Below are positions 15,843 to 64,000 of a DNA stretch of 64,000 nt, piece by piece. The notes beneath the pieces were generated by a model. The model searched no databases, had not been told where the DNA came from, and saw only the letters and a list, made by a program, of their open reading frames with translations. Both the position numbers and the translations under genes were made by a program. The DNA is taken from the IMG/VR virus record IMGVR_UViG_3300033153_013547, positions 1 through 64,000 of that record; one strand, given 5' to 3'. The stretch's first letter is position 1. Each line of letters begins with the position of its first letter.

Positions 15843-16277
15843 TCATCCTCGCACCTCCAGCAATTCGGGATTATCGTGGATGTTGCCGATGATTTTCCAC
15901 CAGTTCTGACGCTTTATCATGTCGGTCTCGTCCCAATCGGCAAAAGCCATAGTGTCAAAGTATTTATGGTCATCAACACACTCAAGGGCAAATTGGGCAT
16001 TGCGATACACGACCACCAAGCATGGACGCTTTAGGTCTGTTTCGAGCATATCCCCCTCCCATATTTCGCTGCCGTCTCGGTCGCAGAGTCCGGTGTATTG
16101 GCCGACGGTTTCGGAGTCTACGGGAGTAAAATACCCCTTCATTATGTGCCAGACAACAGGCGGGGATTGAGATGGCCGAGTGCGACATATCAAATGTTCT
16201 CCGCCAAGTTCAACATAAAACCCATAAATCCACTCGCCATTATCAACGCGCTTACCTCTAAACTCACGCCTATCCAT
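15843..16277 (-). CDS. YopX-family protein
   Basis: REFRGKRVDNGEWIYG, TVGQYTGL.D..G.EIWEGD, IIGNIHDNPELLE. Confidence 0.92.
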   Translation of the reverse strand: MDRREFRGKRVDNGEWIYGFYVELGGEHLICRTRPSQSPPVVWHIMKGYFTPVDSETVGQYTGLCDRDGSEIWEGDMLETDLKRPCLVVVYRNAQFALECVDDHKYFDTMAFADWDETDMIKRQNWWKIIGNIHDNPELLEVRG

Positions 16278-22432: not shown

Positions 22433-24094
22433 CTAATAATCAAGATCAACTACTATATCATCCTTCTCTGACTCTAACATTTTCTTTACATGTCGATCAA
22501 TAAGATCTTCACTAAATTTTTCTTTTTCTTCCAGAACATTATACACATGATGTTCTATGCTTTCCTGACCATCTTGGAGAACTGTTTTCAACATATAATA
22601 ACTAACTCTGTTGAGCTGTCCTGGTCTATGAAATCTTGCCAAAAATTGGGACCAACTTCCCATTCTAAAATTAGCACCATAGATCACAACAGTATTACAA
22701 CAAACAAGATTGATACTCTCACCAGCATCTATTTGCATTACCAGAAACTGATTGCCATTAGGATCTTGAAAATCAGATATAACATTTGTTGCTTCTTGTG
22801 CTGTAAGACCACCATATAATTTGTTGCAGTTTAGTTTATCAGCCAATTCTTCCACTGTTTTTCTAAAGTGAGCTGCCACAACAACTTTGTTGCCAGATTC
22901 TTTAGCAGAATCCACAATATCCAGCAGAAATTCTAACTTGGCAGAATCCTCTATGCTTTGTCCAGCAGCAATACCATCACATATTTGCATAAGATCCATA
23001 TTATTTGATGGTTTGTGTTCAGCAGCAAGCACAGCACACTTAGTTACATAAAGATCATTAAGCCTTTTGCTTGCCATACAATCAATAGGAATAAATAATT
23101 GTTCAGGTAAATCCAAGCACTGATCTTTTGTAAATCTGATACCATAATCAAATAATATAGATCTTAGCTCTGGTATGTTTTTGAACCCTACCAGAACTTT
23201 ATGCCTATGAGGTCTATACCTTTGGACCATAACACAATATTTTTGGGTAAATTGCCAATAACTTTTACCTAATATATTTTTGTCAAGAAATGACAACTGA
23301 CCATACAGATCCATATACTTACTTACAACAGGAGTGCCTGTCATAAGCATTTTATATGGAGCCTTTAGTCTTCTGATAGTTTCAGCATAACTTAGCTTCT
23401 TACCTTTGGTTCTAATTTTGTAATTCTTGATATGATGAGCTTCATCTATTATAATCATATCAAAAGTGTCAAATGCACCAAAACCTATACCATCAGCAGG
23501 AACATAACCTGCTGATTCATAGTTAGTAATATAAAACAATGCATCTTTTTTGAAGGCTGCTTGTTTTTGCTGTGGAGAACCAGATGCTATAGAATAACTA
23601 TGAAACCTTTCAGGCAACCACTTCTCAATTTCTTTTACCCAGGTCTCAATCATTGCTTTTTTGGGTGAGAAGATCAATACTTTATGGACAGCACCTTGCT
23701 CTACCCTATATTTTACAATTTCAAGAACAACCCTTGTTTTTGCAGTGCCTTGTTCAGCAAAAATAGCACTCTTGCTTTTTAGCAAGCAAAACTGATACAT
23801 AATATTCTGATGATCAAAAGCAGGAGGATCACCTTCAATCACTGGCTTATTGTGATCTAAGTGATATGTGATTTCAAAAAGATCTTCATCAAGGTAATTT
23901 GCTAATTTTTCTTTTGCCCATTCACATTTAGCAATAGGAAGATACCAATATTTACCAACAGGCTCATATCTGGCTTTTATGGACTTCATAACTGAAATAT
24001 ACTCATCAGCCCAGGGAAAATACATGACACATCTATCTTCATCTGGAACAATTGTAAGTCCAAACCTGTCCTTAGGCAGGGGAATGCTAATCAT
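22433..24094 (-). CDS. SNF2-family helicase with an N-terminal HARP-like domain
   Basis: AEQGTAKT, NYE, IIIDEAH.IKN, MTGTP, ESINL, QFLARFHRPGQ. Confidence 0.9.
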   Translation of the reverse strand: MISIPLPKDRFGLTIVPDEDRCVMYFPWADEYISVMKSIKARYEPVGKYWYLPIAKCEWAKEKLANYLDEDLFEITYHLDHNKPVIEGDPPAFDHQNIMYQFCLLKSKSAIFAEQGTAKTRVVLEIVKYRVEQGAVHKVLIFSPKKAMIETWVKEIEKWLPERFHSYSIASGSPQQKQAAFKKDALFYITNYESAGYVPADGIGFGAFDTFDMIIIDEAHHIKNYKIRTKGKKLSYAETIRRLKAPYKMLMTGTPVVSKYMDLYGQLSFLDKNILGKSYWQFTQKYCVMVQRYRPHRHKVLVGFKNIPELRSILFDYGIRFTKDQCLDLPEQLFIPIDCMASKRLNDLYVTKCAVLAAEHKPSNNMDLMQICDGIAAGQSIEDSAKLEFLLDIVDSAKESGNKVVVAAHFRKTVEELADKLNCNKLYGGLTAQEATNVISDFQDPNGNQFLVMQIDAGESINLVCCNTVVIYGANFRMGSWSQFLARFHRPGQLNRVSYYMLKTVLQDGQESIEHHVYNVLEEKEKFSEDLIDRHVKKMLESEKDDIVVDLDY

Positions 24095-25763
24095 TGATCT
24101 GATTCCTTGCTATAGCAGCCTCTTTATACTTAGGAGGCAATATTTTTGCATATTCTGATAGTGCTTCTAATCCTGTTACATATTTAGACATATACATCAA
24201 GACATCTGGCACATCATATAACGTTGATAGAATCATTATATCTGCTAATCCTAATCTTACACCACTCATCTCTCTAAGATCAGGAGACATAACTCTAGCA
24301 GGACCTGTGGCTGACAAACTATCAACAGCATGATTGTTTTGCCTAGTCATGAACACAAGACCATTGATACAATCAATTTCTTGCCCTTTATGAAATACCT
24401 TAGGACAATCTATTTCAGCAATCTTGCTTATACTATACTCACCAGTAAATTGCCTCACAAATAACCTTTTACCTGGGGCAATTCTATGAGATAGGACAGC
24501 TTCTATGAGCTGTCCATAATTTCTTCTGCCCTTATCTGGACCCTTGTAGATGGAAAATGGGTTGATGATCATGTCAATTCTCCTGCCCAGATCATCCACA
24601 GGCATCCAGTCATCAGGCATGATCTTCACAGTGCCTTTTTGACCACTTCTGTTAGACAATTTATCTCCATCTTCTAACTTGTAAGCAATAAATAGTTCAA
24701 TAGAAACAACCTTATGAATAGAATTCATATATGGTTTTTCTATTTCACTCACTTTATCAACAAATGCAAATGTATTAGCATCATAAAAATGTGCTTTGCA
24801 TTCGTTTTCACTATATGCACCTGCATAGGTGCATAATTGCTGACCATGTTCTACTATTTCTCCAGGTTTTACTAAGGAACTTGTGTTATGCCACATAAGA
24901 GACTTTCTCTTGAAACAACAAAATTTACCAGCAACTGATCTTGATACAACAATAGTGTCTTCAAATGTTTCTGCTATTGAAAAGAATGCTACTCTAACAT
25001 TCAGTCCAGGTGGATCAGGTATATGTCCTGTATCTGCTGTGGTAATTAAGGGTAACTCACTATGAACCAAATCAGTAGCATGTAACATGTTAGAAACAAT
25101 TATTGGTATTCTTCCTAAATTTGTATGTTCTATAAAGGGAATTTTCCTACTAACCTTAGAAAGCCTTCTACTATTAGATGGATCATTATTGTTATCCACC
25201 AAGAAATTAACTAGTCCTATCTTGTCTCCCATACTTGTAGCCAGAGTGTCTAAAATCTTTATAGATTGTATCCCTACTCTAAAATCATAATCTTGTGAAG
25301 GAGCAAGATTCTTTTCAGAATGAACCAAGACTCTATCCTTCATAACTGCTCTGTACAAAGCATTACCATAACCAAGAGGCTCAGTATTGATAGACATGTC
25401 TAGCATTGATTGAAACATGGATGGCCTTATGTCATATCCAAATTTGAGCCTATTCATGTTAAAATCTCCTACAGCTCTTGCCAATCTCATTTCTGCATAT
25501 TGTACTGGATCTACTAATATTCCTCCTATAAAATGAAACATAGGAATTCTAGACACACCATTATGTACTATATGTCCATCATCATACAATCTTGGTATGA
25601 TCAAAGTAACATTTAGTTCTGCATAATTAAATGATGCTAACGCTTTATCTTCTTCTTCCAGAATCTTGATATCAGATGAGCCAACAAAAATTTTGGGCAG
25701 AGAATATGGATTTACCAGGTATCTATGTTTTATACTCATATGCCCCTCCCCTGGTTTTGCCAT
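24087..25763 (-). CDS. RNA polymerase beta-like subunit (highly reduced)
   Basis: IPRLYDDGHIVHNG, IPFIEH, FEDTIVVS, GDKLSNRSGQKGTV, MP...GRRIDMIINP, GVRLG. Confidence 0.9.
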   Translation of the reverse strand: MAKPGEGHMSIKHRYLVNPYSLPKIFVGSSDIKILEEEDKALASFNYAELNVTLIIPRLYDDGHIVHNGVSRIPMFHFIGGILVDPVQYAEMRLARAVGDFNMNRLKFGYDIRPSMFQSMLDMSINTEPLGYGNALYRAVMKDRVLVHSEKNLAPSQDYDFRVGIQSIKILDTLATSMGDKIGLVNFLVDNNNDPSNSRRLSKVSRKIPFIEHTNLGRIPIIVSNMLHATDLVHSELPLITTADTGHIPDPPGLNVRVAFFSIAETFEDTIVVSRSVAGKFCCFKRKSLMWHNTSSLVKPGEIVEHGQQLCTYAGAYSENECKAHFYDANTFAFVDKVSEIEKPYMNSIHKVVSIELFIAYKLEDGDKLSNRSGQKGTVKIMPDDWMPVDDLGRRIDMIINPFSIYKGPDKGRRNYGQLIEAVLSHRIAPGKRLFVRQFTGEYSISKIAEIDCPKVFHKGQEIDCINGLVFMTRQNNHAVDSLSATGPARVMSPDLREMSGVRLGLADIMILSTLYDVPDVLMYMSKYVTGLEALSEYAKILPPKYKEAAIARNQIND

Positions 25764-27390
25764 TTTCTGCCAAAAATTCTTCTGTTAGGCATCTGCAGAA
25801 AACATTTTTTCCATTGATTGATACAGGCCATGCATTATAATCACATCCTACACATAGATCAGGCATCCATGCTTTTCCAAAGCATGGTGGGACATCTTCA
25901 GACAATTCAGGGAAAAATGCAAACTCAGGATCAATTACTCTGGCAAATTCAAGTGTTTCTGGACAACATCCTGAGTTATTGATCATAACGAGTGTGAAAA
26001 AGAGACCAAGTGCTGATGCAGGATTAGTTGAAGCATACAAATCATAGATTTCCTCAGGATTTCCTCCTGCCATGCAGAAAGGACGTATAGTTCCCACACC
26101 ATCCTTTACATCTTTCTGTCTAGCTGTTAATATTAAATCACAGAATGTACTAACTTCTTTTCTTGTAAGACTATCAGAAAATGCTTGCATTAGCAAATTT
26201 ATTGTCTCATCTTTGGTGTCTGCACACAATTTACGTACAGCAGAACAAATATTGAATATGTTTATTAATCTGCCATGCTTGCTGTGTAAATTAGTCTGTG
26301 AAATAGTTTCACAGACTTTTGCAACTTGACTTGCTCTTGTATCATTTATTTCAAGCAAATTCATGGTGTCTAGCCACAATTGTCCTGCTGATCCCATACC
26401 TATCTTCAATTGTATATTGGCAGACTGAACTGATGTTCTTTCTGCATAGAATTTTTCAATATTCAAAACCCCATCTTTATACAAAGAATCCTGTATATCT
26501 GATAGTTTTAGTGATCTACCATGAAAACTATCTGCCATTTCTATAAACTGATCCTTCATAGACTTATCTACGGGAGGATTTACCTCAGAAAACTCATTGA
26601 TATACAATACATGGGTATCCAAATAGTTTTCGTATAGCAATTCTTCTTTTGTACGTTTATGAAGGTTCTGTGGTAGACGAATTATACATAATCCATCACC
26701 ATCAAAATCACAAGCCAAGCCATTATTAATTGCAGGATGGATCTTAATACATCTTCCTTCCACTGGAATCATCCTGCAACCTATGATGCTGTCCCTATGC
26801 AAGACTGGATTCCTCAATAGGAGACCTATATCCCCCTCTTTAGCATCAATCTTTTTCATCAGTCCTATAGGAACACCAACTTCAGATTTCTCAGGATCAA
26901 GATCTAATGAAGTGGCAGCTATAGCTCTTCCACTAAATGGCATTCTTAGCCCCATAATATATCTGGCAAATATACCAGATTTTCCTACAATTGCTTCTGT
27001 TAATTTCTTTTGTAATCTAGTAACTGCTCTTTGCATAGAGTCACTGGTAAAATTCTTGTAAACAATAAGTTTTACAATCCCATCATAAGCTGCTGTCACA
27101 CCATTTATTATGTAATACAATCCTGTAATATCCACTGTACTTGGTCTAAGGTGTATAGGTATGACATATATTCTATCTACCACTGATCCAAAAAATCTGC
27201 AGAATATTTGATGATCATCACTATCCTTAGGCAACATAATATAACGACCCTTAGTAAATAAATCCGGGTCCATTACTGTACCAGTCGGATCGTACTCATG
27301 AAATGGAACAATAGATGAATAACCGCCAACTAATTCACGCATTATTACCTTCTTTACCAAAAATAACATGAAGATATTCACATGGCACAA
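25723..27390 (-). CDS. RNA polymerase beta'-like subunit (highly reduced); start probably ATG 27342
   Basis: VIPIHLRP, GKSGIFA..IMGLRMPFSGRAI, LLRNPVLHR.SI, catalytic ACDFDGD, trigger-loop-like ETISQTNLHSKHG. Confidence 0.92.
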   Translation of the reverse strand: MCHVNIFMLFLVKKVIMRELVGGYSSIVPFHEYDPTGTVMDPDLFTKGRYIMLPKDSDDHQIFCRFFGSVVDRIYVIPIHLRPSTVDITGLYYIINGVTAAYDGIVKLIVYKNFTSDSMQRAVTRLQKKLTEAIVGKSGIFARYIMGLRMPFSGRAIAATSLDLDPEKSEVGVPIGLMKKIDAKEGDIGLLLRNPVLHRDSIIGCRMIPVEGRCIKIHPAINNGLACDFDGDGLCIIRLPQNLHKRTKEELLYENYLDTHVLYINEFSEVNPPVDKSMKDQFIEMADSFHGRSLKLSDIQDSLYKDGVLNIEKFYAERTSVQSANIQLKIGMGSAGQLWLDTMNLLEINDTRASQVAKVCETISQTNLHSKHGRLINIFNICSAVRKLCADTKDETINLLMQAFSDSLTRKEVSTFCDLILTARQKDVKDGVGTIRPFCMAGGNPEEIYDLYASTNPASALGLFFTLVMINNSGCCPETLEFARVIDPEFAFFPELSEDVPPCFGKAWMPDLCVGCDYNAWPVSINGKNVFCRCLTEEFLAENGKTRGGAYEYKT

Positions 27391-30901: not shown

Positions 30902-30910
30902 ATTTATGCC

Positions 30911-31285
30911 TCAATTTTCGTGCGAATTCAAAACTTGGCAGGCATGTCGCCCAAAGTCCTTTATAATGTTTACTATTTCTCTAGCTTCACTCAAGCAATA
31001 AGAAGTAAGGCTATCTAAGGGTAGGTGTCCTCCATAGAATTTGCCTCTTGTTGCAATATCTTTCCAATAACCTGAATAAGACAGGCATTGGAAAATAATT
31101 TGCACCAAGGTCTCAGGTCCATCATAATCTTGATAGGTAACAACAACAATCAGTGCCATCCTTTCAGCAGCAAAAATTGTAGACTGATATTCATTGTCAC
31201 CTGTTTTTTCCCACTCCAATTGATTAGACTTCTTCACCATAAAAGACTTTCCTTCTGTCTTTCTCTTCTTGAAACTCAAGAACAA
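30911..31285 (-). CDS. hypothetical protein, paralog of 30572..30901
   Basis: As above; start probably ~31240. Confidence 0.65.
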   Translation of the reverse strand: MFLSFKKRKTEGKSFMVKKSNQLEWEKTGDNEYQSTIFAAERMALIVVVTYQDYDGPETLVQIIFQCLSYSGYWKDIATRGKFYGGHLPLDSLTSYCLSEAREIVNIIKDFGRHACQVLNSHEN

Positions 31286-40749: not shown

Positions 40750-42576
40750 TCACAGAACAATATTATATTTATCCTCAAATTCATCATATGTCATGATTGG
40801 AATTCCTGTTTCCATTGCTATAGCCATTTTAGATGATGTAGAATTTTTATCAGCACATATCAATATTTCAACTGGTTTTTTCCAAGTGTCAGAAACTATA
40901 AAGCCACGACTGACTAAAATATCCCTATATTCATATCTATACAGAGTGGGATGTTTGCCAGTACAGCAGACAACAATTGGAGATGCTTCAGTGCTAAGTA
41001 TTTCTGCATCCAGATCAACAAAAAGATCAAGACAATCCCTGACTTTGTCAATACCTTCAGAGATCAGGGCTTTGTGAGTATCATCAAACCCTTTGATATC
41101 ATCAAGACCATTTGCCTGCACTTCTGATATGAAATTCTCAATATTACCATAGTGTTCTATGAGTTTCTTGCCCTGTTTTCTGTCAATATTTGGCAAATCA
41201 GCACATTCAATAATTGCTTCTTCACTAAGTTCCAGATTTCTTAATTGTCTGTGCAGGTATTCTGCTGCCTCATCACTAAAACCATCAATTGCTGATAACT
41301 CATCAACAGAGAGATCATAAATGTCTCTTAGATTTTGATATCCAGCATTGAACAGCATTTCAACTGTTGCATCTGATATGTTATCTATTTCAAGGACAGA
41401 AAAAAGATGTTGAAGCTTAGAGAGCCTTTCTTTTGCACAATCTGTATTATTGCAACAAGCATGATATTTTCTCAATACGCTTGTGGTATTGCACAACGAA
41501 CAAACAGGTAGTTTTAGTCCCGTAGTAGATGATTCGTAAATATCCGAAATATATGGTGGAGAATCATAGACATGGGACTTAGCAACACCTACACGCGCAC
41601 CTATACCAAGCTTCAAGTTCTTAAGAATAGAGTAATTACTTACATTAACACGTTGTATATTAATACCATTAATAATTACTGGATTCTCAAGAACCAGAAC
41701 TGGGGCTAAATGTCCCTGGAACCCCATATTCCATTCAATTGATCCAATAATAGCTTCAGCAGAGTCATCAAACTTGACAGCTACAGTATTACCTGTAGTA
41801 ACTGCTTCTAATACCAACCCATTTGTACGATATGATTTAAGAGAATGATGAACAAATCGTCGTCTTAAATATTCATACAAAGACAAAGGGGTATTTATAT
41901 TATCTGATGCTGGAATATATTGCTCTGCAGGCCCAAGATAGAAATAAGAAAGAATTTGTTTCTTTGTTTCATAACTATCAATACATTCTCCTAAAACATC
42001 AAAGCTAACAATATTGATACTGTTATTCAACTTGGCTAATGAGGAAGGTTCAGCACTTAACAATTTAGAAGTAATACTCTGTGATTTTTCCAGTAATTCC
42101 CAAATAAAAGTAACAACTTCTGCCCTAACAACAATAAGATCATAAGGAAGATTTACATTAGTGTATATGTTCAAATATCTAGCCTTGTCTGTTATATCAT
42201 AACCAACAAGTCCATTGCCTCTTGTAGAAATAGATCTAAGATTCCCTTTATAATAAACAATTTCTAATGAAATACCATCAAGTTTTGGAGAATAAACTAT
42301 AGGACTATTCTGTACTCTTATCCACTCAGCCAGTTCTATTGGATCTTTTATTTTTCTTAGTCCCTTTATAGGAAAAACATGAGTCACTTTCTTTCTAAAC
42401 TTACTGACATCAACATCAAGACTTGCATCTGGATCCATATCTGTTAGCAGATCATATTCAGCATCTGTCAAAATAGGCTTATTTCCATTGTAATAAGCCT
42501 CATTAGCGTTTTTGACCAATGCTTTTTTGTCTGATTTTGTCATGAAACAACCCCTTAAAAACATTTTCCATACCAA
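40750..42576 (-). CDS. ligA: NAD+-dependent DNA ligase-like protein (atypical motifs); start probably ~42543
   Basis: AYYN..P.LTDAEYD (Ia), PKLDG, STRGNG..G.DIT, AVKF, OB fold, C4 zinc finger, HhH, BRCT. Confidence 0.88.
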   Translation of the reverse strand: MVWKMFLRGCFMTKSDKKALVKNANEAYYNGNKPILTDAEYDLLTDMDPDASLDVDVSKFRKKVTHVFPIKGLRKIKDPIELAEWIRVQNSPIVYSPKLDGISLEIVYYKGNLRSISTRGNGLVGYDITDKARYLNIYTNVNLPYDLIVVRAEVVTFIWELLEKSQSITSKLLSAEPSSLAKLNNSINIVSFDVLGECIDSYETKKQILSYFYLGPAEQYIPASDNINTPLSLYEYLRRRFVHHSLKSYRTNGLVLEAVTTGNTVAVKFDDSAEAIIGSIEWNMGFQGHLAPVLVLENPVIINGINIQRVNVSNYSILKNLKLGIGARVGVAKSHVYDSPPYISDIYESSTTGLKLPVCSLCNTTSVLRKYHACCNNTDCAKERLSKLQHLFSVLEIDNISDATVEMLFNAGYQNLRDIYDLSVDELSAIDGFSDEAAEYLHRQLRNLELSEEAIIECADLPNIDRKQGKKLIEHYGNIENFISEVQANGLDDIKGFDDTHKALISEGIDKVRDCLDLFVDLDAEILSTEASPIVVCCTGKHPTLYRYEYRDILVSRGFIVSDTWKKPVEILICADKNSTSSKMAIAMETGIPIMTYDEFEDKYNIVL

Positions 42577-53641: not shown

Positions 53642-55312
53642 TCACTTCTTCCTCCAACCAACAGCAGATTTCAACCTATACATCATAGTCTCAGGTTCTG
53701 TTGAATCCAAACCAGTAGCATAATCTAACAGATCTGACTCATCTTTGCCAAGATTTTTGTCAAGATGTTTAGAAATAATTCTAGGCTTCATAACTGATTT
53801 CTCAGTTTCCTCTTCAAATCCTATTTCTATAATTTTACCTATGTAATGATCAGGATGTAAATAAGCATCTCTTCTTACTTCATCTGTCAATCCAGTTCCT
53901 GCTTTGAATTGTTTTGTGCCATTTTGATTCTGAACAATAAACCCACCAATCATTTTACCTTTTAGTTTGTTTTGTCCAGGGAAGGTGTCTATAATTTCAC
54001 AATCTTCTGTGCTGAGAGCTTTCCATTTGACCATCTGAGAATTGAAATCACCTGTGGTATCCTTTCCCACTACTCCTTCACCATTAGCACTAACCACTTT
54101 TTCAAATAAGGTTTTGCCATCATCTGAGGAAATAGGGACACTAACAAAATTTGACTTCTGAGATCTAACCCAGTTCTCATATATTGCCCTTCTGTCAATA
54201 TATGGCAACTTATCTACTTTTTTACCATCAAATTGATAGACATCAAATATAACAAGTTTAGCCTTACCAGGCAGAATAGCCTGATTTTCTCTACTTTTGA
54301 CAGGCAAAGCATTAGACAATCCTGCAATTATTTGTTCTCTTTCTTGTCCTGATTCAACATAAACCAACTCTGCCTTGAAAATAGTCTTACCATCAGGAAA
54401 TTTCAGTGTTTGCAACTCAGGATAATAATTATAAGTTCTATCAATTGTTTTACCATCCACTGAAATTCTATGGCTGGTAAGGGTAACAGATTTACCTTTA
54501 CTGCCAGAGATATTTACATGTGCTCCCTTGTGTTTTTGTTCCCAAATAATCTTTGGATCACTAAGAGCAGCTGTTACCAAATGTTTTGCAGAAGAATAGA
54601 TTCCTTTGTCTAATCTAACAGCCTTGGAATCTTTCAAGTCACTTTTTGTATAAAGCCATTTACCATTTTTGTTAGTAAGTGTAACCTTTTCATTAGACTC
54701 AGTAATAAACTGAATCTGATCTTCATTACATTTAGTGACTAGAATTTTACCATCATAGACATTTCTAACTTTGCCTTTGCCATAACCTTCTGGTATCTCA
54801 AACCATTTCTTGCTTATTTGATCAGACCAGTTGATTGTATGATCATTAGTCCTAATCATTTGTAATTTCTTGTCAGGTAAAACACCCTTCCTGGTTACAA
54901 ATGACATAGCAAACTTATTACCATACCTATTGACCAAGTGAATTCTATAATCATAGTGCAATCCTGCTTTGTCTGCTACATGTTCTTGAATAACAAGTCT
55001 GGTAAGTTTGCCTTCGTTAGTTTTGCTAGGAACATCAAGTAAGACAGAAGGAAAAATTCTCTTTACAAGGAAATTTGATTTCTCAACACCATATGAATTC
55101 TTGTGTTGAGAAATAGTTTGTTTGATCAATGGATTCACAAGATGATTGAGAAAAGAAATGATGTCTCTTTTGAATTCACAAACAAGATCAGTTAGAGCAT
55201 TAGCAAGACAATTCAAAGCCAAACTCCTTGTAAGATTATTATCTTCTGTCATAATCTCTAGATTGTTATGCATATTGCCAGTGACAACAAGTCTAATATT
55301 TTCATAAATCAA
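53642..55312 (-). CDS. LigD-type 3'-phosphoesterase fused to an ATP-dependent DNA ligase
   Basis: PE domain: VIQEH.A...LHYDYR, TNDH, IPEGYGKG.V..YD.G. Ligase: EQKHKG, AEL, IFDV, EGVVGK, VKWK, OB fold GTGLTD..R. Confidence 0.85.
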   Translation of the reverse strand: MIYENIRLVVTGNMHNNLEIMTEDNNLTRSLALNCLANALTDLVCEFKRDIISFLNHLVNPLIKQTISQHKNSYGVEKSNFLVKRIFPSVLLDVPSKTNEGKLTRLVIQEHVADKAGLHYDYRIHLVNRYGNKFAMSFVTRKGVLPDKKLQMIRTNDHTINWSDQISKKWFEIPEGYGKGKVRNVYDGKILVTKCNEDQIQFITESNEKVTLTNKNGKWLYTKSDLKDSKAVRLDKGIYSSAKHLVTAALSDPKIIWEQKHKGAHVNISGSKGKSVTLTSHRISVDGKTIDRTYNYYPELQTLKFPDGKTIFKAELVYVESGQEREQIIAGLSNALPVKSRENQAILPGKAKLVIFDVYQFDGKKVDKLPYIDRRAIYENWVRSQKSNFVSVPISSDDGKTLFEKVVSANGEGVVGKDTTGDFNSQMVKWKALSTEDCEIIDTFPGQNKLKGKMIGGFIVQNQNGTKQFKAGTGLTDEVRRDAYLHPDHYIGKIIEIGFEEETEKSVMKPRIISKHLDKNLGKDESDLLDYATGLDSTEPETMMYRLKSAVGWRKK

Positions 55313-57344: not shown

Positions 57345-57956
57345 CTATTTGTTACTCCGTGAGAGCTTTTTGAGAGCTCTGCTGAAACGACGAGGCATGA
57401 TATAACGAAATTCGTATAGAAAGTTCTGAACAATTATAGCAAACTTATTCCATTGCCACTTAGACTTATCAATAGATAGATAGAGCTTACAGCCATCTAT
57501 TTCTATGATCTTGGTAGCAATATCAGGTTTGTTAGAGTCAGAATATACAACAATCTTGCTAGCTAAAACCTCGTTGCATATATGATTTTTGTGTTCCAAG
57601 ATTGCCTGTTGAATTTCTAAGCATGTACTTATGTCAGGATCATTTGGGACAAAACCAATACCAAGCAATATTTTGTCTGCATATTTCAAATTGAGTTCTT
57701 TTCTGTAATGCTGAACATGGCTAACCAATTCACGAGCCTTACCTTCAACGACAAGATCAGATACAAGCGTTGTATCAAGGACAGCCATGAGATTATTGCT
57801 ACTACGAGAAGTATAACCTTCTTTCTCGGCAATGATGACTTCAATCTCATCTCTGAACATTTCAACCCACTTGTCATCAATCTTGACAAAAAACTGACCA
57901 TTGTCTTCAAAACGCCATCTGCCATTTTCAAGGTGTGTTGTCATAATACTTACCAA
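57345..57956 (-). CDS. stand-alone IleRS C-terminal (DUF5915-like) domain protein
   Basis: VLDTTL..DLV.EG.ARELV..VQ..RKE.NL...DKI...I..EVLA. Confidence 0.8.
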   Translation of the reverse strand: MVSIMTTHLENGRWRFEDNGQFFVKIDDKWVEMFRDEIEVIIAEKEGYTSRSSNNLMAVLDTTLVSDLVVEGKARELVSHVQHYRKELNLKYADKILLGIGFVPNDPDISTCLEIQQAILEHKNHICNEVLASKIVVYSDSNKPDIATKIIEIDGCKLYLSIDKSKWQWNKFAIIVQNFLYEFRYIMPRRFSRALKKLSRSNK

Positions 57957-58486
57957 GGAAGAACATATTCCAATATGTCTTCTACTTTTTCAGCAGGAAT
58001 AATGTTCAGATCATATTTTAGCAAGTCTTGGGAATAGTTTGAAGCAGGTAAAACCACTGCTTTCAAACCATTTTCTTTTGCTGCAAACAATTTAGCAGGA
58101 AGACTGCCAACAGAGGATATAAAACCATCAGATGATATTTCACCCATTATACCAATATCTGGATCAACAGATTTCATGGTTACCAGGCTTATTATAGCAA
58201 CAGCAATGGCTACTCCTGCACTGGATCCATCAAGAGGAATGGGAGAAGAAAACAAAAAATTGCGTAGAAAAAAAACCTCTGGATCAATATTTATGTCCAT
58301 ACTTTTGACTGCCATAAAGGCTGTCCTACAACTTTTACAAAATGAATTGCACAAACCATTGGCAAACAAAAGTTTTCCTTGACCAGCATCCAATTCAACC
58401 TTTATGGTTATCAATTTCCCTCGTATTGCCAAGCAACCATTCTTGGAACCAAGGGTTATTCCAAGACCAGTAGATACACCTATCAT
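57950..58486 (-). CDS. stand-alone Lon protease (S16) proteolytic domain
   Basis: PLDGSSAGVAIA, GEIS.DG.I..VG.L.AK..AA...G...V.LP..N (Ser-Lys dyad). Confidence 0.9.
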   Translation of the reverse strand: MIGVSTGLGITLGSKNGCLAIRGKLITIKVELDAGQGKLLFANGLCNSFCKSCRTAFMAVKSMDINIDPEVFFLRNFLFSSPIPLDGSSAGVAIAVAIISLVTMKSVDPDIGIMGEISSDGFISSVGSLPAKLFAAKENGLKAVVLPASNYSQDLLKYDLNIIPAEKVEDILEYVLPW

Positions 58487-60482: not shown

Positions 60483-60800
60483 CTAATCAAATTCTTCATA
60501 CAACCACTCAGATTCTTTAGCCCTATCAACATGATTAATTATCATATTGTTGTTATTGTAAGATACTTTGAACAACTGCCAAGATTGATTGCTATCTCGT
60601 GGTATGTACCAATAAAGAGGGTTGTAGCCAAATTTTTCAATGAAACGACGAGAATATGCTGCATATCGTGAATTTTTAGATGTATTTTGCTCAAAGACAG
60701 CACCAAATTGATTATGAAATTGTTTGAGTGCTCCCCCAGACATAGGAGCACTCTGAATTGCTTTCCTAACCATATTGATCATCATAGATATAGAAATCAT
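60483..60800 (-). CDS. hypothetical protein
   Basis: 105 aa, GAGG RBS. Confidence 0.6.
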   Translation of the reverse strand: MISISMMINMVRKAIQSAPMSGGALKQFHNQFGAVFEQNTSKNSRYAAYSRRFIEKFGYNPLYWYIPRDSNQSWQLFKVSYNNNNMIINHVDRAKESEWLYEEFD

Positions 60801-61297
60801 GATTGTTCCTCCTGTTGCATTCCTCTCATTTCTATAGATCTATTGTTCCTTTCTTGTTCATTCCTATCAGCCAGGTAATCCCTGGCTTCATATGCTTCCT
60901 GAGCCAATTCTGGTATTTCCTGACTAAACTCTGACTGAACAGCACTACCACCTTTTGGTGGATTTGTTGGTTTCTTGTTATCATTTGGTTGATAACCTTG
61001 AAAATTGTTCTGTCGAGGAACAACAACACTACCTGACTCATTAAGTTCAGAAATATACAGATGACCCACCAGAGGTTGTAACGGAGAATTGTTGTTACCT
61101 ATAGACTTATCAGATTCAGGAACATATGAGTGATCTACCAGAGATTGTGATGAGGAATTGTTGTTACCTATAGACACATGAATCTCAAGTCCTGCAAGTT
61201 CTTTGACATCAGAAATCAAATTCCTGATTTCCCTAATGATGACAATAGCATCTTTAGGTTTATCCAACACTTCTTTTACCAATGTAATCCAGTCCAT
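60797..61297 (-). CDS. hypothetical low-complexity protein with an internal 21-aa tandem duplication
   Basis: SIGNNNS..Q.LV.H.Y..E occurs twice. Confidence 0.65.
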   Translation of the reverse strand: MDWITLVKEVLDKPKDAIVIIREIRNLISDVKELAGLEIHVSIGNNNSSSQSLVDHSYVPESDKSIGNNNSPLQPLVGHLYISELNESGSVVVPRQNNFQGYQPNDNKKPTNPPKGGSAVQSEFSQEIPELAQEAYEARDYLADRNEQERNNRSIEMRGMQQEEQS

Positions 61298-61815: not shown

Positions 61816-62064
61816 TTAGACAGAATGGCTGTTGAAATATCGAGTAACATTGTGCTTTGCTTCATGTGCTGTTGCAAATGGGAATACTATCTCGTAATCA
61901 CCATTCTTATGGTCAAATTCCCAGCTCCATACTGATGGTTTGCATATGGAGTCTTCTACAATCACAGCACGTCCTGCTGGGAAAAGACGCTCATACTTTT
62001 CGCGTACATTGGGTGTAAATGGATTACGACCGATGCGATCAATCTTTTTCCATCTTCTGTCCAT
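61816..62064 (-). CDS. hypothetical protein (start MDRRW)
   Basis: AGGAGG RBS before ATG 62064. Confidence 0.65.
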   Translation of the reverse strand: MDRRWKKIDRIGRNPFTPNVREKYERLFPAGRAVIVEDSICKPSVWSWEFDHKNGDYEIVFPFATAHEAKHNVTRYFNSHSV

Positions 62065-62125
62065 CCGCTTTCCTCCTAAACTTATGGTTTTTGTTTGTTT
62101 GACCAATACAAGAACAAAAACCATA

Positions 62126-62570
62126 ATCAGTCAAGAATGACTGATAGATGTAATTCCCATTTGACAAATATTAGAGTCAAATAGTGACTTACCCTTGTTC
62201 ACCCAGCCATCTTTTTATTCAAAAGGGAGCCCAATGCAAGCATTCAGGCAAAGATGGATCAGTCAAGGTGTCTTAATACTAAAAATAAGCAGCCAAGCAA
62301 ACAGGGCTGTAATCAAAAGCATTTCTATAAATGCTCCTTTTGCAACCCAGCATTTGTGGAATGCTTTGTTTGCTTGACCAATACCTATGGCAGAGCTAAA
62401 ACTTCAGTCAATAAACCAGCCTACCTTTTGACTGATCTTTGACATGATCAGTCAATGTCATAGTAAGCCAATTCCAGCATCTACAAGCTGCCAAAGATGC
62501 TTTATTGAGATAGAAGCAATCCTTGGGACCCAACTTACCACATATTGGGTAGAGGATTCTTCTACTCTTC
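62126..62570. ncRNA. candidate large structured non-coding element
   Basis: Longest gap in minus-strand coding, packed with inverted repeats; see findings. Confidence 0.5.
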
Positions 62571-62586
62571 AACCAACATATTCCCA

Positions 62587-62982
62587 TTAGTTGGTTGTTG
62601 AGGTCTTTTCCCTAATAGACAAAAACTGAATGTCTGGAAGATGTTCTGCTAAGCAACCCACTTCCAAATAAACCTTAGTGTCTTCTGCAGGAATGCCACT
62701 ATTTACTACAGAAATTTCAATAAATAGTGGCACTTGGGGATATTTCTTTATATCATCATGTAACAGAAATATCCCAGTATTCCTGCTATGTTTCCCCATA
62801 TCTATATGCAATTGGTAACCAATATACCTCATAGAAGCATCTGAGCAATGAAGACGCATAGTAAGTAGAAGATAACTGCTTGGAAGATTCATGTCTTCAG
62901 ACAAATTTTCCAACTGCACATGATTATAGATCCAATGAGGTAAGAATTCTAACAGAGTAGCAATCCTTTCTTCAGAAAGCAT
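62587..62982 (-). CDS. hypothetical protein
   Basis: 131 aa, AGGAGG RBS. Confidence 0.65.
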   Translation of the reverse strand: MLSEERIATLLEFLPHWIYNHVQLENLSEDMNLPSSYLLLTMRLHCSDASMRYIGYQLHIDMGKHSRNTGIFLLHDDIKKYPQVPLFIEISVVNSGIPAEDTKVYLEVGCLAEHLPDIQFLSIREKTSTTN

Positions 62983-63224
62983 TGTTATCCTCCTGTTTTT
63001 GTATTTTGTGAAGACAACACTTATATTATTCCTAATAATAGAAAATTATAGGAAAATGTGAAATATTTGCTGATCAGTCAGCATCACAAAAAAACAGAGT
63101 TGCAACTATGGTTTGTTGTGGTTTCTGTCTTTCCTACAATTTTTTAGGAATTTGATTGCAAGAAAATTACTGGTCCTTCCAACTCATGCAGTCTTCATGA
63201 AATTGCGTAAGATTATGATAAGCA

Positions 63225-63545
63225 TCAATAATCATGATTATCCTCTATTTGTTGTTTCCATCTGAGCATGGCTTTTTCTGCAGCCAACTTTGCCTTGTAA
63301 ATACAAGGTTCAAAACCATGGAATGCAGGATCATCTACAGTTCCTAAGGGTATAGACCAAAGAGTTGTCTTAGTTCTACAAAATGATCGTTTGCTGAATA
63401 GTCGCCATGCCCAATTACTATCATGAGATAGGCCTCTCCAAACAATAGCAGCAACTTTTGATCCATCAGGCAAAGAAGTTACCCATTGCCATTCAAGCAA
63501 TACTGGTTTCCAATTACCTACTAATGATTTTGCTTTCTCAATCAT
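63225..63545 (-). CDS. 'C-x-Y/H-K-A-K-L' paralog family member
   Basis: SLVGNW...WAWRLF...GFEPCIYKAKLAAE. Confidence 0.7.
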   Translation of the reverse strand: MIEKAKSLVGNWKPVLLEWQWVTSLPDGSKVAAIVWRGLSHDSNWAWRLFSKRSFCRTKTTLWSIPLGTVDDPAFHGFEPCIYKAKLAAEKAMLRWKQQIEDNHDY

Positions 63546-63807: not shown

Positions 63808-64000
63808 GATTTCTTCCTTTTACACATTTTTCTACTGCAATGAAGACAAAACTATGTTCTATGGCATGAAGGAAAGGCTACCCATCACTGGCACAAAACA
63901 ACAAGAAATAGAGAGTAACAAGAGTAACAATAGTCCTGCTGAAATCAAGTAATTTATGAGTAAATCAGTTTGTGAATCAATGGATGAATTCTTGGATAAA

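What the first reader, a model, noticed from the sequence alone, without database searches (positions are those of the whole stretch)
62126..62570. ~450-nt non-coding region dense in helices, with a recurring TCAGTCA(A) motif in both orientations
Seen on the plus strand: hairpins atcagtca-agaa-tgactgat (62126-62145) and atttgac...gtcaaat (62159-62182); ccatcttt...aaagatgg (~62207-62257); a multibranch domain closed by caagcaaaca...tgtttgcttg (~62294-62376) containing agcattt..aaatgct and agcatt..aatgct; ttgactgatc...gatcagtcaa (62428-62455); agcatct...agatgct; and acccaa...ttgggt. TCAGTCAA occurs near 62127, 62259, 62404 and 62448, with its complement near 62138 and 62428, so the 62428 copy has several mutually exclusive partners. 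A further GATCAGTCA lies in the AT-rich intergenic stretch near 63072. Inference: a large ncRNA or conformational switch, or a multi-operator, origin or packaging site. Several copies include GATC, so binding could be methylation-sensitive.
Basis: partly seen in the sequence, partly recalled or inferred. Interest (0 to 1): 0.6.

Follow-up and report, generated by a model that had tools for sequence, protein, structure and literature searches.

The report
Hairpin-dense non-coding spacer in orphan jumbo phage
A 0.46-0.52 kb stretch between two small genes of a 261-kb phage with no known relatives is truly non-coding and folds into nine stem-loops built from a few repeated words, most likely as RNA on the genes' strand, but with no relatives and no transcript data its function cannot be shown.

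Summary
The gap 62125-62586 is one of the four longest gaps left by a crude ORF call of a 261,124-bp phage genome. All six frames score as non-coding. It folds far better than shuffles: minus strand -158 kcal/mol, z -6.4; plus strand z -4.6. TCAGTCAA is strongly clustered, with 5 of the genome's 20 copies in 500 nt.

The genes lie on the minus strand. The central 330 nt (62148-62476) is structured on that strand only (z -6.1 against -2.9; strand difference exceeded by 0 of 160 shuffles). I therefore read it as a structured intercistronic RNA: nine tandem stem-loops, ending in a weak terminator-like hairpin and a 13-bp hairpin just before the Shine-Dalgarno site of an 82-aa gene.

No Rfam family matches, even at E 10. 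The proposed switch pairings cost 9-10 kcal/mol. GATC is not enriched.

The phage and both flanking genes have no relatives in any collection searched, and no sequencing run was listed, so conservation and expression are untested. A DNA-level role as protein-binding sites near a putative origin remains a live rival. Interest is moderate to low.

The parts
62587..62982 (-). Upstream ORF of 131 aa, an orphan. Its AGGAGG Shine-Dalgarno site precedes the ATG at 62982. Its stop codon TAA (62589-62587) lies in the loop of hairpin D0.
   Evidence: Hexamer score +0.185. Only itself in the 5.8-billion-protein word search. No Pfam or PHROG match.
62570..62597 (-). D0: 8-bp Watson-Crick hairpin CAACCAAC/GUUGGUUG with a 12-nt loop that spans the upstream stop codon.
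   Evidence: z -4.25 on the minus strand, -4.20 on the plus strand; equal on both.
62507..62567 (-). D1: long hairpin of 22 pairs in four segments, including ACCCAAU/GUUGGGU at the tip.
   Evidence: -24.3 kcal/mol, z -4.70 on the minus strand and -4.67 on the plus strand. The structure is strand-symmetric.
62476..62501 (-). D2: hairpin AGCAUCU...AGAUGCU, 7 bp.
   Evidence: Not significant alone (z -1.2 on the minus strand, -1.9 on the plus strand).
62413..62474 (-). D3: inner 10-bp helix UUGACUGAUC/GAUCAGUCAA (62455-62446 with 62437-62428), extended by an outer 13-bp helix with 6 G-U pairs (62474-62462 with 62425-62413) that can form on the minus strand only.
   Evidence: minus strand -25.8 kcal/mol, z -5.71; plus strand -16.0 kcal/mol, z -4.12. 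Outer-helix pair probability 0.89.
62404..62411 (-). Unpaired single copy of UUGACUGA in the linker between D3 and D4.
   Evidence: Pairing it with the 3' arm of D3 instead costs +10.5 kcal/mol.
62270..62402 (-). D4: three-way-junction domain. A 29-pair basal stem with 7 G-U pairs carries hairpins AGCAUU-CCACA-AAUGCU (62365-62349) and AGGAGCAUUU-AUAG-AAAUGCUUUU (62338-62315).
   Evidence: minus strand -49.0 kcal/mol, z -4.88. The plus strand gives a different fold at -37.4 kcal/mol, z -2.92. Closing-pair probability 1.0.
62193..62268 (-). D5: irregular hairpin (CCAUCUUU/AAAGAUGG core) with a UUGACUGAUC copy (62266-62257) in its weak basal helix.
   Evidence: z -1.76 on the minus strand, -0.54 on the plus strand. 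This is the least secure domain (pair probability 0.73).
62150..62192 (-). D6: hairpin CUAUUUGAC/GUCAAAUGG with extensions.
   Evidence: minus strand -14.1 kcal/mol, z -4.24; plus strand -8.6 kcal/mol, z -2.98.
62113..62145 (-). D7: AUCAGUCA-UUCU-UGACUGAU (62145-62126) followed by UAUGGUUUUUGUU. A weak intrinsic-terminator-like site on the gene strand.
   Evidence: flags it as terminator-like on the minus strand. The U-run starts 5 nt after the stem. Terminator-like sites are not enriched over shuffles in 44-64 kb (14 against 9.5 +/- 3.8).
62083..62125 (-). D8: perfect 13-bp hairpin UAUGGUUUUUGUU/AACAAAAACCAUA. Its 5' arm is the U-tract of D7. It ends 5 nt before the Shine-Dalgarno site.
   Evidence: D7 plus D8 z -6.62 on the minus strand and -6.34 on the plus strand. 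Pair probability 1.0.
61816..62077 (-). Downstream gene: AGGAGG at 62077-62072, ATG at 62064, 82 aa, an orphan. A public gene call starts it at 62124 (102 aa), with no Shine-Dalgarno site and inside D8.
   Evidence: Hexamer score +0.233. Only itself in the word search. The exhaustive HMMER search found only spurious repeat-protein hits.
62090..62109 (.). Copy 1 of the 20-nt direct repeat TTTGTTTGYTTGACCAATAC. It lies in the loop and 3' arm of D8.
   Evidence: 19 of 20 identical to the copy at 62365-62384. No other copy in the genome.
62365..62384 (.). Copy 2 of the 20-nt direct repeat. It lies in the 5' side of the D4 basal stem, so the two copies are not structurally equivalent.
63035..63082 (-). 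Upstream control region of the 131-aa gene. Promoter-like TTCACA-16-TATTAT (63062-63035), a perfect TATAAT beside it, and just upstream the palindrome GCTGA-TCAG-TCAGC (63069-63082) holding GATCAGTCA.
   Evidence: Sigma-70-like matches are not enriched in 44-64 kb (69 against 79 +/- 10), so the promoter call is weak.

Best explanation
The stretch is a structured RNA segment on the minus strand, the strand of every neighbouring gene. It is probably co-transcribed with the 131-aa gene upstream.

It starts at that gene's stop codon and folds into nine consecutive stem-loops (D0-D8), with about 71% of bases paired. It ends in a weak terminator-like hairpin (D7 plus a U-run), then a perfect 13-bp hairpin (D8) that abuts the Shine-Dalgarno site of the 82-aa gene.

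Inferred mechanism: a long intercistronic leader or 3' UTR. It would uncouple the two genes by partial termination or pausing at D7, or by processing of the long duplexes. It would leave hairpin-capped ends that set the stability and translation of the downstream message.

The repeated words (UUGACUGA/UCAGUCAA and AGCAUU/AAUGCU) are the arms of the hairpins, probably the trace of local duplications. They may also be recognised by a phage or host factor.

Shown: non-coding status, excess structure, strand-specific structure in the central 330 nt, and the position relative to stop codon, Shine-Dalgarno site and start codon.
Inferred: transcription, termination or processing, and any regulatory effect.
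For: - All genes from 0.6 to 83 kb are on the minus strand.
- The gap is the fourth longest in the genome by a crude ORF call.
- All six frames have negative hexamer scores and the internal ORFs score like shadow ORFs. They have no significant Pfam match (best E 0.023, below cut-off). There is no suppressor tRNA and all three stop codons are in use.
- Whole-gap fold: minus strand -158 kcal/mol, z -6.37; plus strand z -4.59. This is beyond all 24 coding controls.
- Central part 62148-62476: minus z -6.09 against plus z -2.88. The strand difference has z -3.19 and is exceeded by 0 of 160 shuffles.
- D3, D4, D5 and D6 are each more stable on the minus strand, through G-U pairs (6 of 13 in the outer helix of D3, 7 of 29 in the D4 stem). 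No domain is better on the plus strand.
- D7 is flagged as terminator-like on the minus strand only.
- D8 ends 5 nt before AGGAGG, and the ATG follows.
- Several other gaps in the same gene block also show minus-strand-specific structure: 30902-31223, 65822-66132 and 68572-68924.
- Giant phages are known to make 5'-UTR-derived and intergenic small RNAs by premature termination (PMC11512511).
Against: - There is no transcript evidence; no sequencing run was listed.
- There are no relatives, so no covariation test is possible.
- Over the whole element (62083-62600) the strand asymmetry is weak: z -1.68, with 11 of 160 shuffles as extreme.
- The outer hairpins D0, D1, D7 and D8 are pure Watson-Crick palindromes that fit a DNA-level role equally well.
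- D7 is a poor terminator: 3 G-C pairs, and the U-run starts 5 nt after the stem. Terminator-like sites are not enriched locally.
- No promoter can be assigned with confidence.
- Sense-strand coding windows of this phage are themselves shifted to z -1.2.
- A copy of the motif sits upstream of a promoter-like site, where it would act as DNA.
Confidence: 0.45

Rival explanations
1. The stretch is a DNA-level element: an array of binding sites for a phage or host DNA-binding protein that recognises (A)TCAGTCAA, core TTGAC. It would act as an operator or enhancer cluster, or as an accessory part of a replication origin whose iterons lie 1.4 kb away at about 63.97-64.19 kb. The hairpins would then be palindromic sites, and the RNA fold a by-product.
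For: - TCAGTCAA is extremely clustered: 5 of 20 genome copies, P about 7e-10.
- All 7 intergenic copies in the genome lie at 62.1-62.5 kb or 68.9 kb.
- The TTGAC core reaches its genome-wide density maximum here.
- Copies occur in both orientations. One further copy sits in a palindrome (63069-63082) directly upstream of a promoter-like site, where it would act as DNA.
- D0, D1, D7, D8 and the inner helix of D3 are perfect Watson-Crick palindromes, equal on both strands.
- An iteron-like array, (A)ATCAATGGAT in 6 exact and further degenerate copies with a 12-nt period, lies at 63977-64146.
- GC skew weakens from about -0.19 to about 0 between 56 and 68 kb without a change of gene strand.
Against: - The two palindromes have opposite half-site arrangement and different spacing (ATCAGTCA-N4-TGACTGAT against TGACTGATC-N8-GATCAGTCA). 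One dimeric protein could not bind both in the same way.
- Site spacings of 11, 121, 145, 25 and 19 nt show no helical phasing.
- The central 330 nt is structured on one strand only, through G-U pairs, which a duplex-DNA site array does not predict.
- The region is not AT-rich (GC 39.2% against 36% for the genome).
- It contains no tandem iterons.
- No recognisable initiator or DNA-binding protein is encoded nearby.
Confidence: 0.2
2. The stretch encodes an independent, stable, trans-acting structured ncRNA of about 330-450 nt, from D1 or D3 to the D7 terminator. It would be made from its own phage-specific promoter or cut out of the polycistronic transcript, and would act as a scaffold or sponge. 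Its repeated hairpin stems and two exposed UUGACUGA copies would bind a protein or a complementary RNA.
For: - The size, the 71% pairing and the three-way junction D4 resemble large ncRNAs rather than simple terminators.
- There are two families of hairpins with identical stems (UUGACUGA:UCAGUCAA twice; AGCAU:AUGCU three or four times) plus unpaired extra copies.
- A terminator-like 3' end lies on the gene strand.
- The strand-specific structure is centred on D3-D6.
Against: - No promoter motif can be identified upstream or inside. No sequence is shared with any other intergenic spacer that could mark a phage promoter.
- No Rfam family matches even at E 10.
- There are no homologues, hence no evidence of selection on the structure.
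- The structure runs without a break from the upstream stop codon to the downstream Shine-Dalgarno site, as expected of a spacer within an operon.
Confidence: 0.15
3. The stretch is functionless spacer DNA shaped by local duplication. Replication template-switching or slippage would have created direct and inverted copies of a few short words in a dispensable gap, and the excess folding energy is a by-product.
For: - The region is built from few words in both orientations (X six times, AGCAT(T) six times) plus a 20-nt direct repeat 275 nt apart whose two copies sit in non-equivalent structural positions.
- Many helices are perfect, which suggests they are young.
- The element is unique in the genome and in all databases searched.
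- Neighbouring gaps at 65.2-66.1 kb hold even longer perfect palindromes. This region of the genome may simply be prone to forming them.
Against: - The genome is 92% coding by a crude call, so a 460-nt inert gap is unusual.
- Mismatches in the imperfect helices are almost all of the type that keeps pairing on the sense strand (G-U). Only one A-C mismatch was noted in D3 plus D4, and the strand-difference test gives 0 of 160.
- The element is framed precisely by a stop codon and a Shine-Dalgarno site.
Confidence: 0.15
4. The stretch encodes one or more small proteins: plus-strand ORFs 62195-62377 and 62254-62442, or the minus-strand ORF 62408-62587 whose ATG overlaps the upstream stop as TAATG. 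Alternatively it encodes a protein read under a code with TGA as sense, since plus frame 1 has only TGA stops.
For: - ORFs of 48-62 aa exist.
- The minus-strand ORF starts in a TAATG stop-start overlap.
- Plus frame 1 of 62065-62589 has 4 stops, all TGA.
Against: - Hexamer scores are -0.14 to -0.23, the same as shadow ORFs (mean -0.20). The flanking genes score +0.19 to +0.23 and small genes have a median of 0.29.
- All six whole-region frames are negative.
- No Pfam match passes its cut-off.
- There is no suppressor tRNA. TGA ends 73 of 282 called genes, so the genome shows no sign of recoding.
- The peptides are rich in Cys and Trp, as expected of out-of-frame translation.
Confidence: 0.03

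Closest known systems
5'-UTR-derived and intergenic small RNAs made by premature termination in giant phages (201phi2-1, phiKZ; PMC11512511)
   Same: Jumbo-phage context. A structured non-coding stretch lies directly upstream of a gene on the gene strand, with a hairpin plus U-run before the start codon.
   Different: Those RNAs are under 250 nt and were found by transcript-end mapping, and one is conserved across genera. This stretch is 460-520 nt, has no transcript data and no homologue, and its terminator-like site is weak.
RNase III-processed intercistronic hairpins of phage polycistronic mRNAs (T7 early region, lambda), from general knowledge
   Same: Long irregular duplexes (D1, D3 and D4, each 22-29 pairs with internal loops) lie between cistrons of one transcription unit. 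Hairpins are left at the message ends.
   Different: The known sites are single hairpins of about 60 nt per junction, not nine in a row. Cleavage was not and cannot be tested here, and the host is unknown.
Large phage-associated structured ncRNAs of Rfam (GOLLD, ROOL) and other large RNAs (OLE, HEARO, group I/II introns, RNase P, tmRNA)
   Same: The size class of about 0.5 kb, multi-domain architecture and occurrence in a phage genome.
   Different: No covariance model matches, even at E 10 with permissive filters. It is not near the tRNA genes, which lie at 36.8 and 49.1 kb. There is no family to align.
Iteron-type replication origins and the P1 pac site (TGATCA/G hexamers under Dam control), from general knowledge
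   Same: Short words are repeated in a non-coding stretch, some holding GATC. A true iteron-like array lies 1.4 kb away.
   Different: There are no tandem phased repeats inside the stretch. It has one TGATCA and GATC at background density. It is not AT-rich, and its structure is strand-specific.
PeSL (promoter-early stem-loop) cassettes of T4-type hyperplastic regions, from general knowledge
   Same: Stem-loops lie between small orphan genes in a plastic region of a large lytic phage.
   Different: PeSLs are a dispersed repeat family. This element shares no sequence with any other spacer of its genome. The dispersed hairpin-plus-RBS repeats at 74-83 kb of the same genome are the better analogue of PeSLs.

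Membership tests
Any Rfam 15 family (GOLLD, ROOL, group I/II introns, RNase P, tmRNA, riboswitches, ribozymes) | A covariance-model match at or near the family's gathering score | tested here: not met
   The gathering-threshold scan of the whole window found only two tRNAs. The E<=10 scan of 61900-63300 on both strands gave only noise (best 21 bits against a 140-bit cut-off), and nothing inside 62170-62670.
Transcription attenuator or leader with terminator and antiterminator | An intrinsic terminator (G+C-rich hairpin directly followed by a U-tract) between the leader and the regulated gene | tested here: inconclusive
   D7 is flagged on the minus strand. It has only 3 G-C pairs and the U-run begins 5 nt after the stem. 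Such sites are not enriched locally.
Transcription attenuator or leader with terminator and antiterminator | A mutually exclusive alternative pairing of comparable stability that sequesters one terminator arm | tested here: not met
   UGACUGAU at 62265-62258 can pair with the 5' arm of D7 over 8 bp. The constrained fold is 9.3 kcal/mol worse (-37.5 against -46.8 kcal/mol), and D7 has pair probability 0.97. A factor-driven switch is not excluded.
Transcription attenuator or leader with terminator and antiterminator | A regulated gene immediately downstream on the same strand | tested here: met
   AGGAGG at 62077-62072 and ATG at 62064 (82 aa), 49 nt after the D7 stem.
Iteron-type replication origin | Tandem, phased direct repeats (iterons) within the element | tested here: not met
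   Tandem Repeats Finder reports only an 11-nt, two-copy artefact of the D3 palindrome. Motif spacings are irregular. Iterons do exist 1.4 kb away, outside the finding.
Iteron-type replication origin | An AT-rich unwinding element and an adjacent initiator gene | tested here: inconclusive
   The region's GC is 39.2%, above the genome mean. The AT-richest 60-mers lie at 62990-63080. The neighbouring proteins are orphans with no recognisable domain.
P1-type pac site with Dam-sensitive hexamers | Clusters of TGATCA/G hexamers, GATC enrichment, and a position in or next to the terminase genes | tested here: not met
   There is one TGATCA in the region. GATC occurs 3 times against 2.8 expected. The locus lies in the minus-strand block of small genes, about 45 kb from the plus-strand block at 107-203 kb. 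The terminase gene itself was not located.
Type III toxin-antitoxin RNA, CRISPR array or RNA anti-CRISPR repeat units | Tandem direct repeats of a 28-45-nt unit | tested here: not met
   No such repeats are found. Only 5-10-nt words and one 20-nt pair 275 nt apart recur.
MITE or IS remnant | Terminal inverted repeats with a target duplication, and further copies in the genome | tested here: not met
   The element is unique in the 261-kb genome. The 20-nt direct repeat does not flank a segment with terminal inverted repeats.

The most novel reading that the evidence does not exclude
The stretch is the first seen member of a new class of large (about 0.5 kb) phage riboregulators. The RNA would be built from repeated self-complementary words, and its identical hairpin stems and exposed UUGACUGA copies would titrate a host or phage factor, or re-pair under that factor's control. 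It would be one element of a wider non-coding island at 62-74 kb, rich in structured RNA, in a jumbo phage lineage that is otherwise unsampled.
Probability: 0.12. Interest if true: 0.6.

Novelty: new member of a known kind. Interest (0 to 1): 0.35.

Why it matters
If the RNA reading is right, this is a large structured regulatory RNA from a jumbo phage lineage with no sequenced relatives. Its RNA polymerase beta-like subunit finds nothing but itself among 5.8 billion proteins.

Together with the even more structured gaps at 65-66 kb and 73-74 kb, it would show that such phages devote kilobases to non-coding RNA. Protein-centred annotation of giant phages ignores this.

In practice it is a candidate for terminator, processing or insulator parts, and a warning that the public 102-aa call of the downstream gene probably starts too early.

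If the DNA reading is right, it helps to locate the replication and control region of an uncultivated jumbo phage.

Either way, the claim rests on one sequence. It cannot be raised above "statistically structured, non-coding" until relatives or transcripts appear.

Tried and rejected
Relatives:
- The search for related loci in viral contigs with four proteins (the 131-aa, 82-aa and 89-aa proteins, and the RNAP beta-like protein) found none.
- The word search of 5.8 billion proteins with three proteins found only the queries themselves.
- The exhaustive HMMER search with the 82-aa protein gave only spurious hits to Ig-like, PKD and other repeat proteins.
- INPHARED DNA search found no match. 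tblastn found only a 28%-identity RNAP hit and scattered hits for the 89-aa PHROG-20898 protein.
- No sequencing run was listed, so read laying could not be used.

Pattern scans:
- TTGACTGATC-N(4-12)-GATCAGTCAA gave 1 viral, 15 metagenome and 12 genome hits. All are single, scattered and unrelated by blastn and tblastx, close to the number expected by chance.
- The 19-mer of the 20-nt repeat hit four viral contigs. All four lie in the codons of SNF2-helicase motif VI (IGQTNK), with no similarity beyond it and none to the phage's own SNF2 gene. This is coincidence, not a pseudogene.

Other readings rejected:
- Rfam at E 10 found nothing.
- Paralogues in the same genome: none.
- Alternative genetic code: no suppressor tRNA, all three stops used, no frame with positive coding score. 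I named no other code.
- Sigma-70 promoters at the four TTGACT copies: no acceptable -10 element by eye, and sigma-70-like sites are not enriched in 44-64 kb (69 against 79).
- A phage promoter motif from k-mer enrichment in spacers: only Shine-Dalgarno words and ACTAATA, which lies upstream of plus-strand genes.
- ESM Atlas look-ups of both flanking proteins were uninformative.

Technical note: a first genome-wide fold scan timed out and was repeated with smaller windows.
Full report
CONTEXT

The window is the first 64 kb of a 261,124-bp virus record with 114-bp terminal repeats. Mean GC is about 36%. By a crude ORF call the genome is 92% coding.

All genes from 0.6 to 83 kb are on the minus strand. 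The window encodes the following:
- split RNA-polymerase beta- and beta'-like proteins;
- a ClpB-like ATPase;
- NAD- and ATP-dependent DNA ligases;
- a T4-type RNA ligase;
- an SbcC-like protein;
- an SNF2 helicase.

This is therefore a jumbo phage. It is an orphan:
- There is no DNA match in 50,697 phage records.
- The RNA-polymerase beta-like protein finds only itself in the 5.8-billion-protein word search, and one 28%-identity hit in isolated phages.
- No sequencing run was listed.

THE OBSERVATION

The stretch 62125-62586 is the gap between two minus-strand ORFs:
- 62587-62982, 131 aa, with AGGAGG before its ATG;
- 61816-62064, 82 aa, with AGGAGG at 62077-62072.

It is the fourth longest gap of the genome.

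It is non-coding:
- The internal ORFs score -0.14 to -0.23 on a hexamer model trained on the phage's long genes. That equals shadow ORFs (mean -0.20). The flanking genes score +0.19 to +0.23.
- All six frames of the whole region are negative.
- No Pfam match passes its cut-off.
- There is no suppressor tRNA, and TAA, TAG and TGA all end called genes.

IS IT MORE THAN CHANCE?

Folding:
- The minus strand gives -158 kcal/mol and z -6.37. The plus strand gives -125.3 kcal/mol and z -4.59. No shuffle is as good on either strand, and my own shuffles reproduce this.
- As background, 24 sense-strand coding windows of the same length give z -1.23 +/- 1.53, with a minimum of -4.3. The region lies beyond all controls, though not by an enormous margin.
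- Among the 24 gaps of at least 280 nt, most have |z| below 2.7.

Motifs:
- TCAGTCAA has 5 of its 20 genome copies in these 500 nt (P about 7e-10).
- All seven intergenic copies in the genome lie here or at 68.9 kb.
- The core GTCAA/TTGAC reaches its genome-wide maximum density here, 10 in 400 nt.
- AGCATT is also locally enriched (5 copies, P 2e-4).
- GATC is not enriched: 3 copies against 2.8 expected. It is over-represented, not avoided, genome-wide (1478 against 1013).

WHICH STRAND?

The minus-strand minimum-energy fold of 62640-62040 is a string of nine stem-loops, D0 to D8, with only short linkers and 71% of bases paired.

Domain by domain:
- D0, D1, D7 and D8 are pure Watson-Crick palindromes, equally stable on both strands.
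- D3, D4, D5 and D6 are each more stable on the minus strand, because of G-U pairs.
- The outer helix of D3 has 13 consecutive pairs, 6 of them G-U. It adds about 10 kcal/mol on the minus strand only.
- The basal stem of D4 has 29 pairs with 7 G-U, and only one A-C mismatch.
- D4 folds into a three-way junction on the minus strand (z -4.9) and into a different, weaker fold on the plus strand (z -2.9).

A paired-shuffle test compares both strands on the same shuffles:
- For the central 62148-62476 it gives z -6.09 (minus) against -2.88 (plus). The strand-difference z is -3.19, exceeded by 0 of 160 shuffles.
- Over the whole 62083-62600 the asymmetry is weak: z -1.68, with 11 of 160 shuffles as extreme.

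The centre therefore carries structure specific to the sense strand, as expected of RNA. The flanks do not discriminate between the strands.

ANATOMY AND LIKELY MECHANISM

- D0 holds the upstream stop codon in its loop.
- D7 (AUCAGUCA-UUCU-UGACUGAU, followed by UAUGGUUUUUGUU) is flagged as terminator-like on the minus strand only. It is weak, and such sites are not enriched locally.
- The U-run of D7 is the 5' arm of D8, a perfect 13-bp hairpin that ends 5 nt before the Shine-Dalgarno site of the 82-aa gene.

The simplest reading is a long structured intercistronic leader or 3' UTR. It would be co-transcribed from the control region at 63035-63082 and would uncouple the two genes by partial termination, pausing or processing. 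It would also cap the message ends with hairpins.

This resembles two known things. One is the 5'-UTR-derived and intergenic small RNAs mapped in giant phages (PMC11512511). The other is RNase III-type intercistronic hairpins (general knowledge).

Transcription, termination and processing are all inferred. None could be tested.

THE SWITCH IDEA

The RNA carries four UUGACUGA copies and two UCAGUCA(A) copies, so mutually exclusive pairings exist on paper. Forcing them gives these results:
- The 62265-62258 copy paired with the 5' arm of D7 costs +9.3 kcal/mol.
- The 62411-62404 copy paired with the 3' arm of D3 costs +10.5 kcal/mol.
- The local hairpins have pair probabilities of 0.97-1.0.

A spontaneous switch is not supported. 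A factor-driven one is not excluded.

THE DNA-LEVEL RIVAL

This rival stays alive for four reasons:
- The motif cluster is extreme, and copies occur in both orientations.
- A further GATCAGTCA sits in the palindrome 63069-63082, directly upstream of promoter-like hexamers and a perfect TATAAT. There it would act as DNA.
- An iteron-like array, (A)ATCAATGGAT with a 12-nt period, has six exact copies at 63977-64146.
- GC skew weakens from about -0.19 to about 0 between 56 and 68 kb without any change of gene strand.

Against it:
- The two palindromes have opposite half-site arrangement and different spacing.
- The sites are not phased.
- The region is not AT-rich (39.2% GC).
- There are no tandem repeats in it.
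- The central structure is strand-specific.

A third rival is that the gap is inert and was shaped by local direct and inverted duplication. The 20-nt direct repeat at 62090 and 62365 shows that duplication did occur, and its two copies occupy non-equivalent structural positions. The sense-strand bias of the wobble pairs and the 92% coding density argue against pure junk.

KNOWN FAMILIES

- No Rfam model matches, at gathering thresholds or at E 10.
- The stretch is not a tandem-repeat RNA such as a type III antitoxin or a CRISPR-like unit.
- It is not a dispersed repeat or MITE.
- It is not a P1-type pac site.

Pattern scans of the viral, metagenome and genome collections gave only scattered, unrelated hits. 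One coincidence also turned up, with SNF2 motif VI codons.

VERDICT

The finding is a real, statistically supported, non-coding, hairpin-dense element. Confidence by reading:
- Structured sense-strand RNA acting in cis between two small orphan genes: about 0.45.
- The same RNA as a discrete trans-acting species: about 0.15.
- A DNA-binding-site array linked to a nearby putative origin: about 0.2.
- An inert product of local duplication: about 0.15.
- Small proteins: about 0.03.

It belongs to no described family. No relative exists in any collection I could search, so conservation, the usual proof, is out of reach. It is best filed as a new, single-sequence example of a known kind (phage intergenic structured RNA), of moderate to low interest.

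The wider pattern may deserve more attention than this one gap. Several far more structured gaps lie at 65-66 kb and 73-74 kb, an iteron array lies at 64 kb, and a GC-rich cassette region lies at 74-83 kb.

No spliced model or alternative code was used.

Noticed in passing
window 63970-64000, continuing in L009:1-190 (G000 64001-64190): An iteron-like array. (A/G)ATCAATGGAT is repeated at 12-, 20- and 32-nt periods, with 6 exact TCAATGGAT of the genome's 19 within 170 nt. An inverted copy (ATCCATT) lies about 40 nt further on. The array sits in a 468-nt non-coding gap (63808-64275) and coincides with a weakening of GC skew. It may be an origin, a centromere or a regulator-binding array.
   Followed up: partly
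L009:1196-2132 (G000 65196-66132): About 0.9 kb is almost free of credible ORFs and far more structured than the finding: z -11 and -14 for 65196-65575, and z -10 on the minus strand for 65822-66132. It holds a 2 x 30-nt palindrome (87% complementary, no spacer) at L009:1388-1447, 18-19-bp perfect hairpins, and three G+C-rich hairpins with CTTCG/CGAAG loops. There is no Rfam match at E 1.
   Followed up: partly
L009:9482-10175 (G000 73482-74175) and L009:10000-19000 (G000 74-83 kb): This region has 45-55% GC in a 36% GC genome. A dispersed repeat occurs 7-9 times: on the minus strand, the hairpin UUUGCCCCAAAGAGUUGUGCUUUGGGGCAAA directly followed by a GGAG-type ribosome-binding site, together with 70-119-nt conserved blocks between small ORFs. 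Genes in this region include a DUF1848 protein and a Cas_VVA1548-domain protein. It looks like an array of mobile or shuffled cassettes, PeSL- or integron-like. It accounts for the most extreme fold energies of the genome, -90 to -125 kcal/mol per 200 nt.
   Followed up: partly
G000 56-68 kb: GC skew changes from about -0.19 to about 0 while the genes stay on the minus strand. The strongly skewed domain runs from 204 kb through the record ends to about 56 kb. This may be a replication signal independent of transcription direction.
   Followed up: no
L009:4890-4925 (G000 68904-68922), minus strand: Two tandem copies of UCAGUCAAUUU lie directly before a hairpin plus a U-rich tail. These are the only other intergenic copies of the finding's motif in the genome.
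   Followed up: partly
window 61816-62124: The public protein collection holds the downstream gene as a 102-aa product starting at ATG 62124. That start has no Shine-Dalgarno site and lies inside hairpin D8. The ATG at 62064, preceded by AGGAGG, gives 82 aa and is the more credible start.
   Followed up: yes
window 61035-61172: A 69-nt tandem duplication at 75% identity lies inside ORF 60797-61297. It gives a 23-residue repeat in an Asn/Ser-rich orphan protein.
   Followed up: no
window 63085-63120, minus strand: The hairpin CACAACAAAC...GUUUUUUUGUG, with a U7 run, lies at the end of the 106-aa gene. It is a more canonical terminator than D7. It is immediately followed by the palindrome and promoter-like region of the next gene.
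   Followed up: partly
window 16277-18607, 24087-27390, 40750-42576, 53642-55312, 57345-58486: Gene content of the phage: a ClpB-like double-AAA ATPase, split RNA-polymerase beta- and beta'-like subunits, both NAD- and ATP-dependent DNA ligases, and a Lon-protease C-terminal domain protein. Only two tRNAs are present, Thr-UGU and Leu-UAA.
   Followed up: partly
L011:1210-1237 (IMGVR_UViG_2744054492_000001): An unrelated 47-kb phage contig carries the same 10-bp-arm palindrome, TTGACTGATC-N8-GATCAGTCAA, in a spacer between two genes on one strand. No other similarity was found, so it is probably an independent hairpin or operator.
   Followed up: yes
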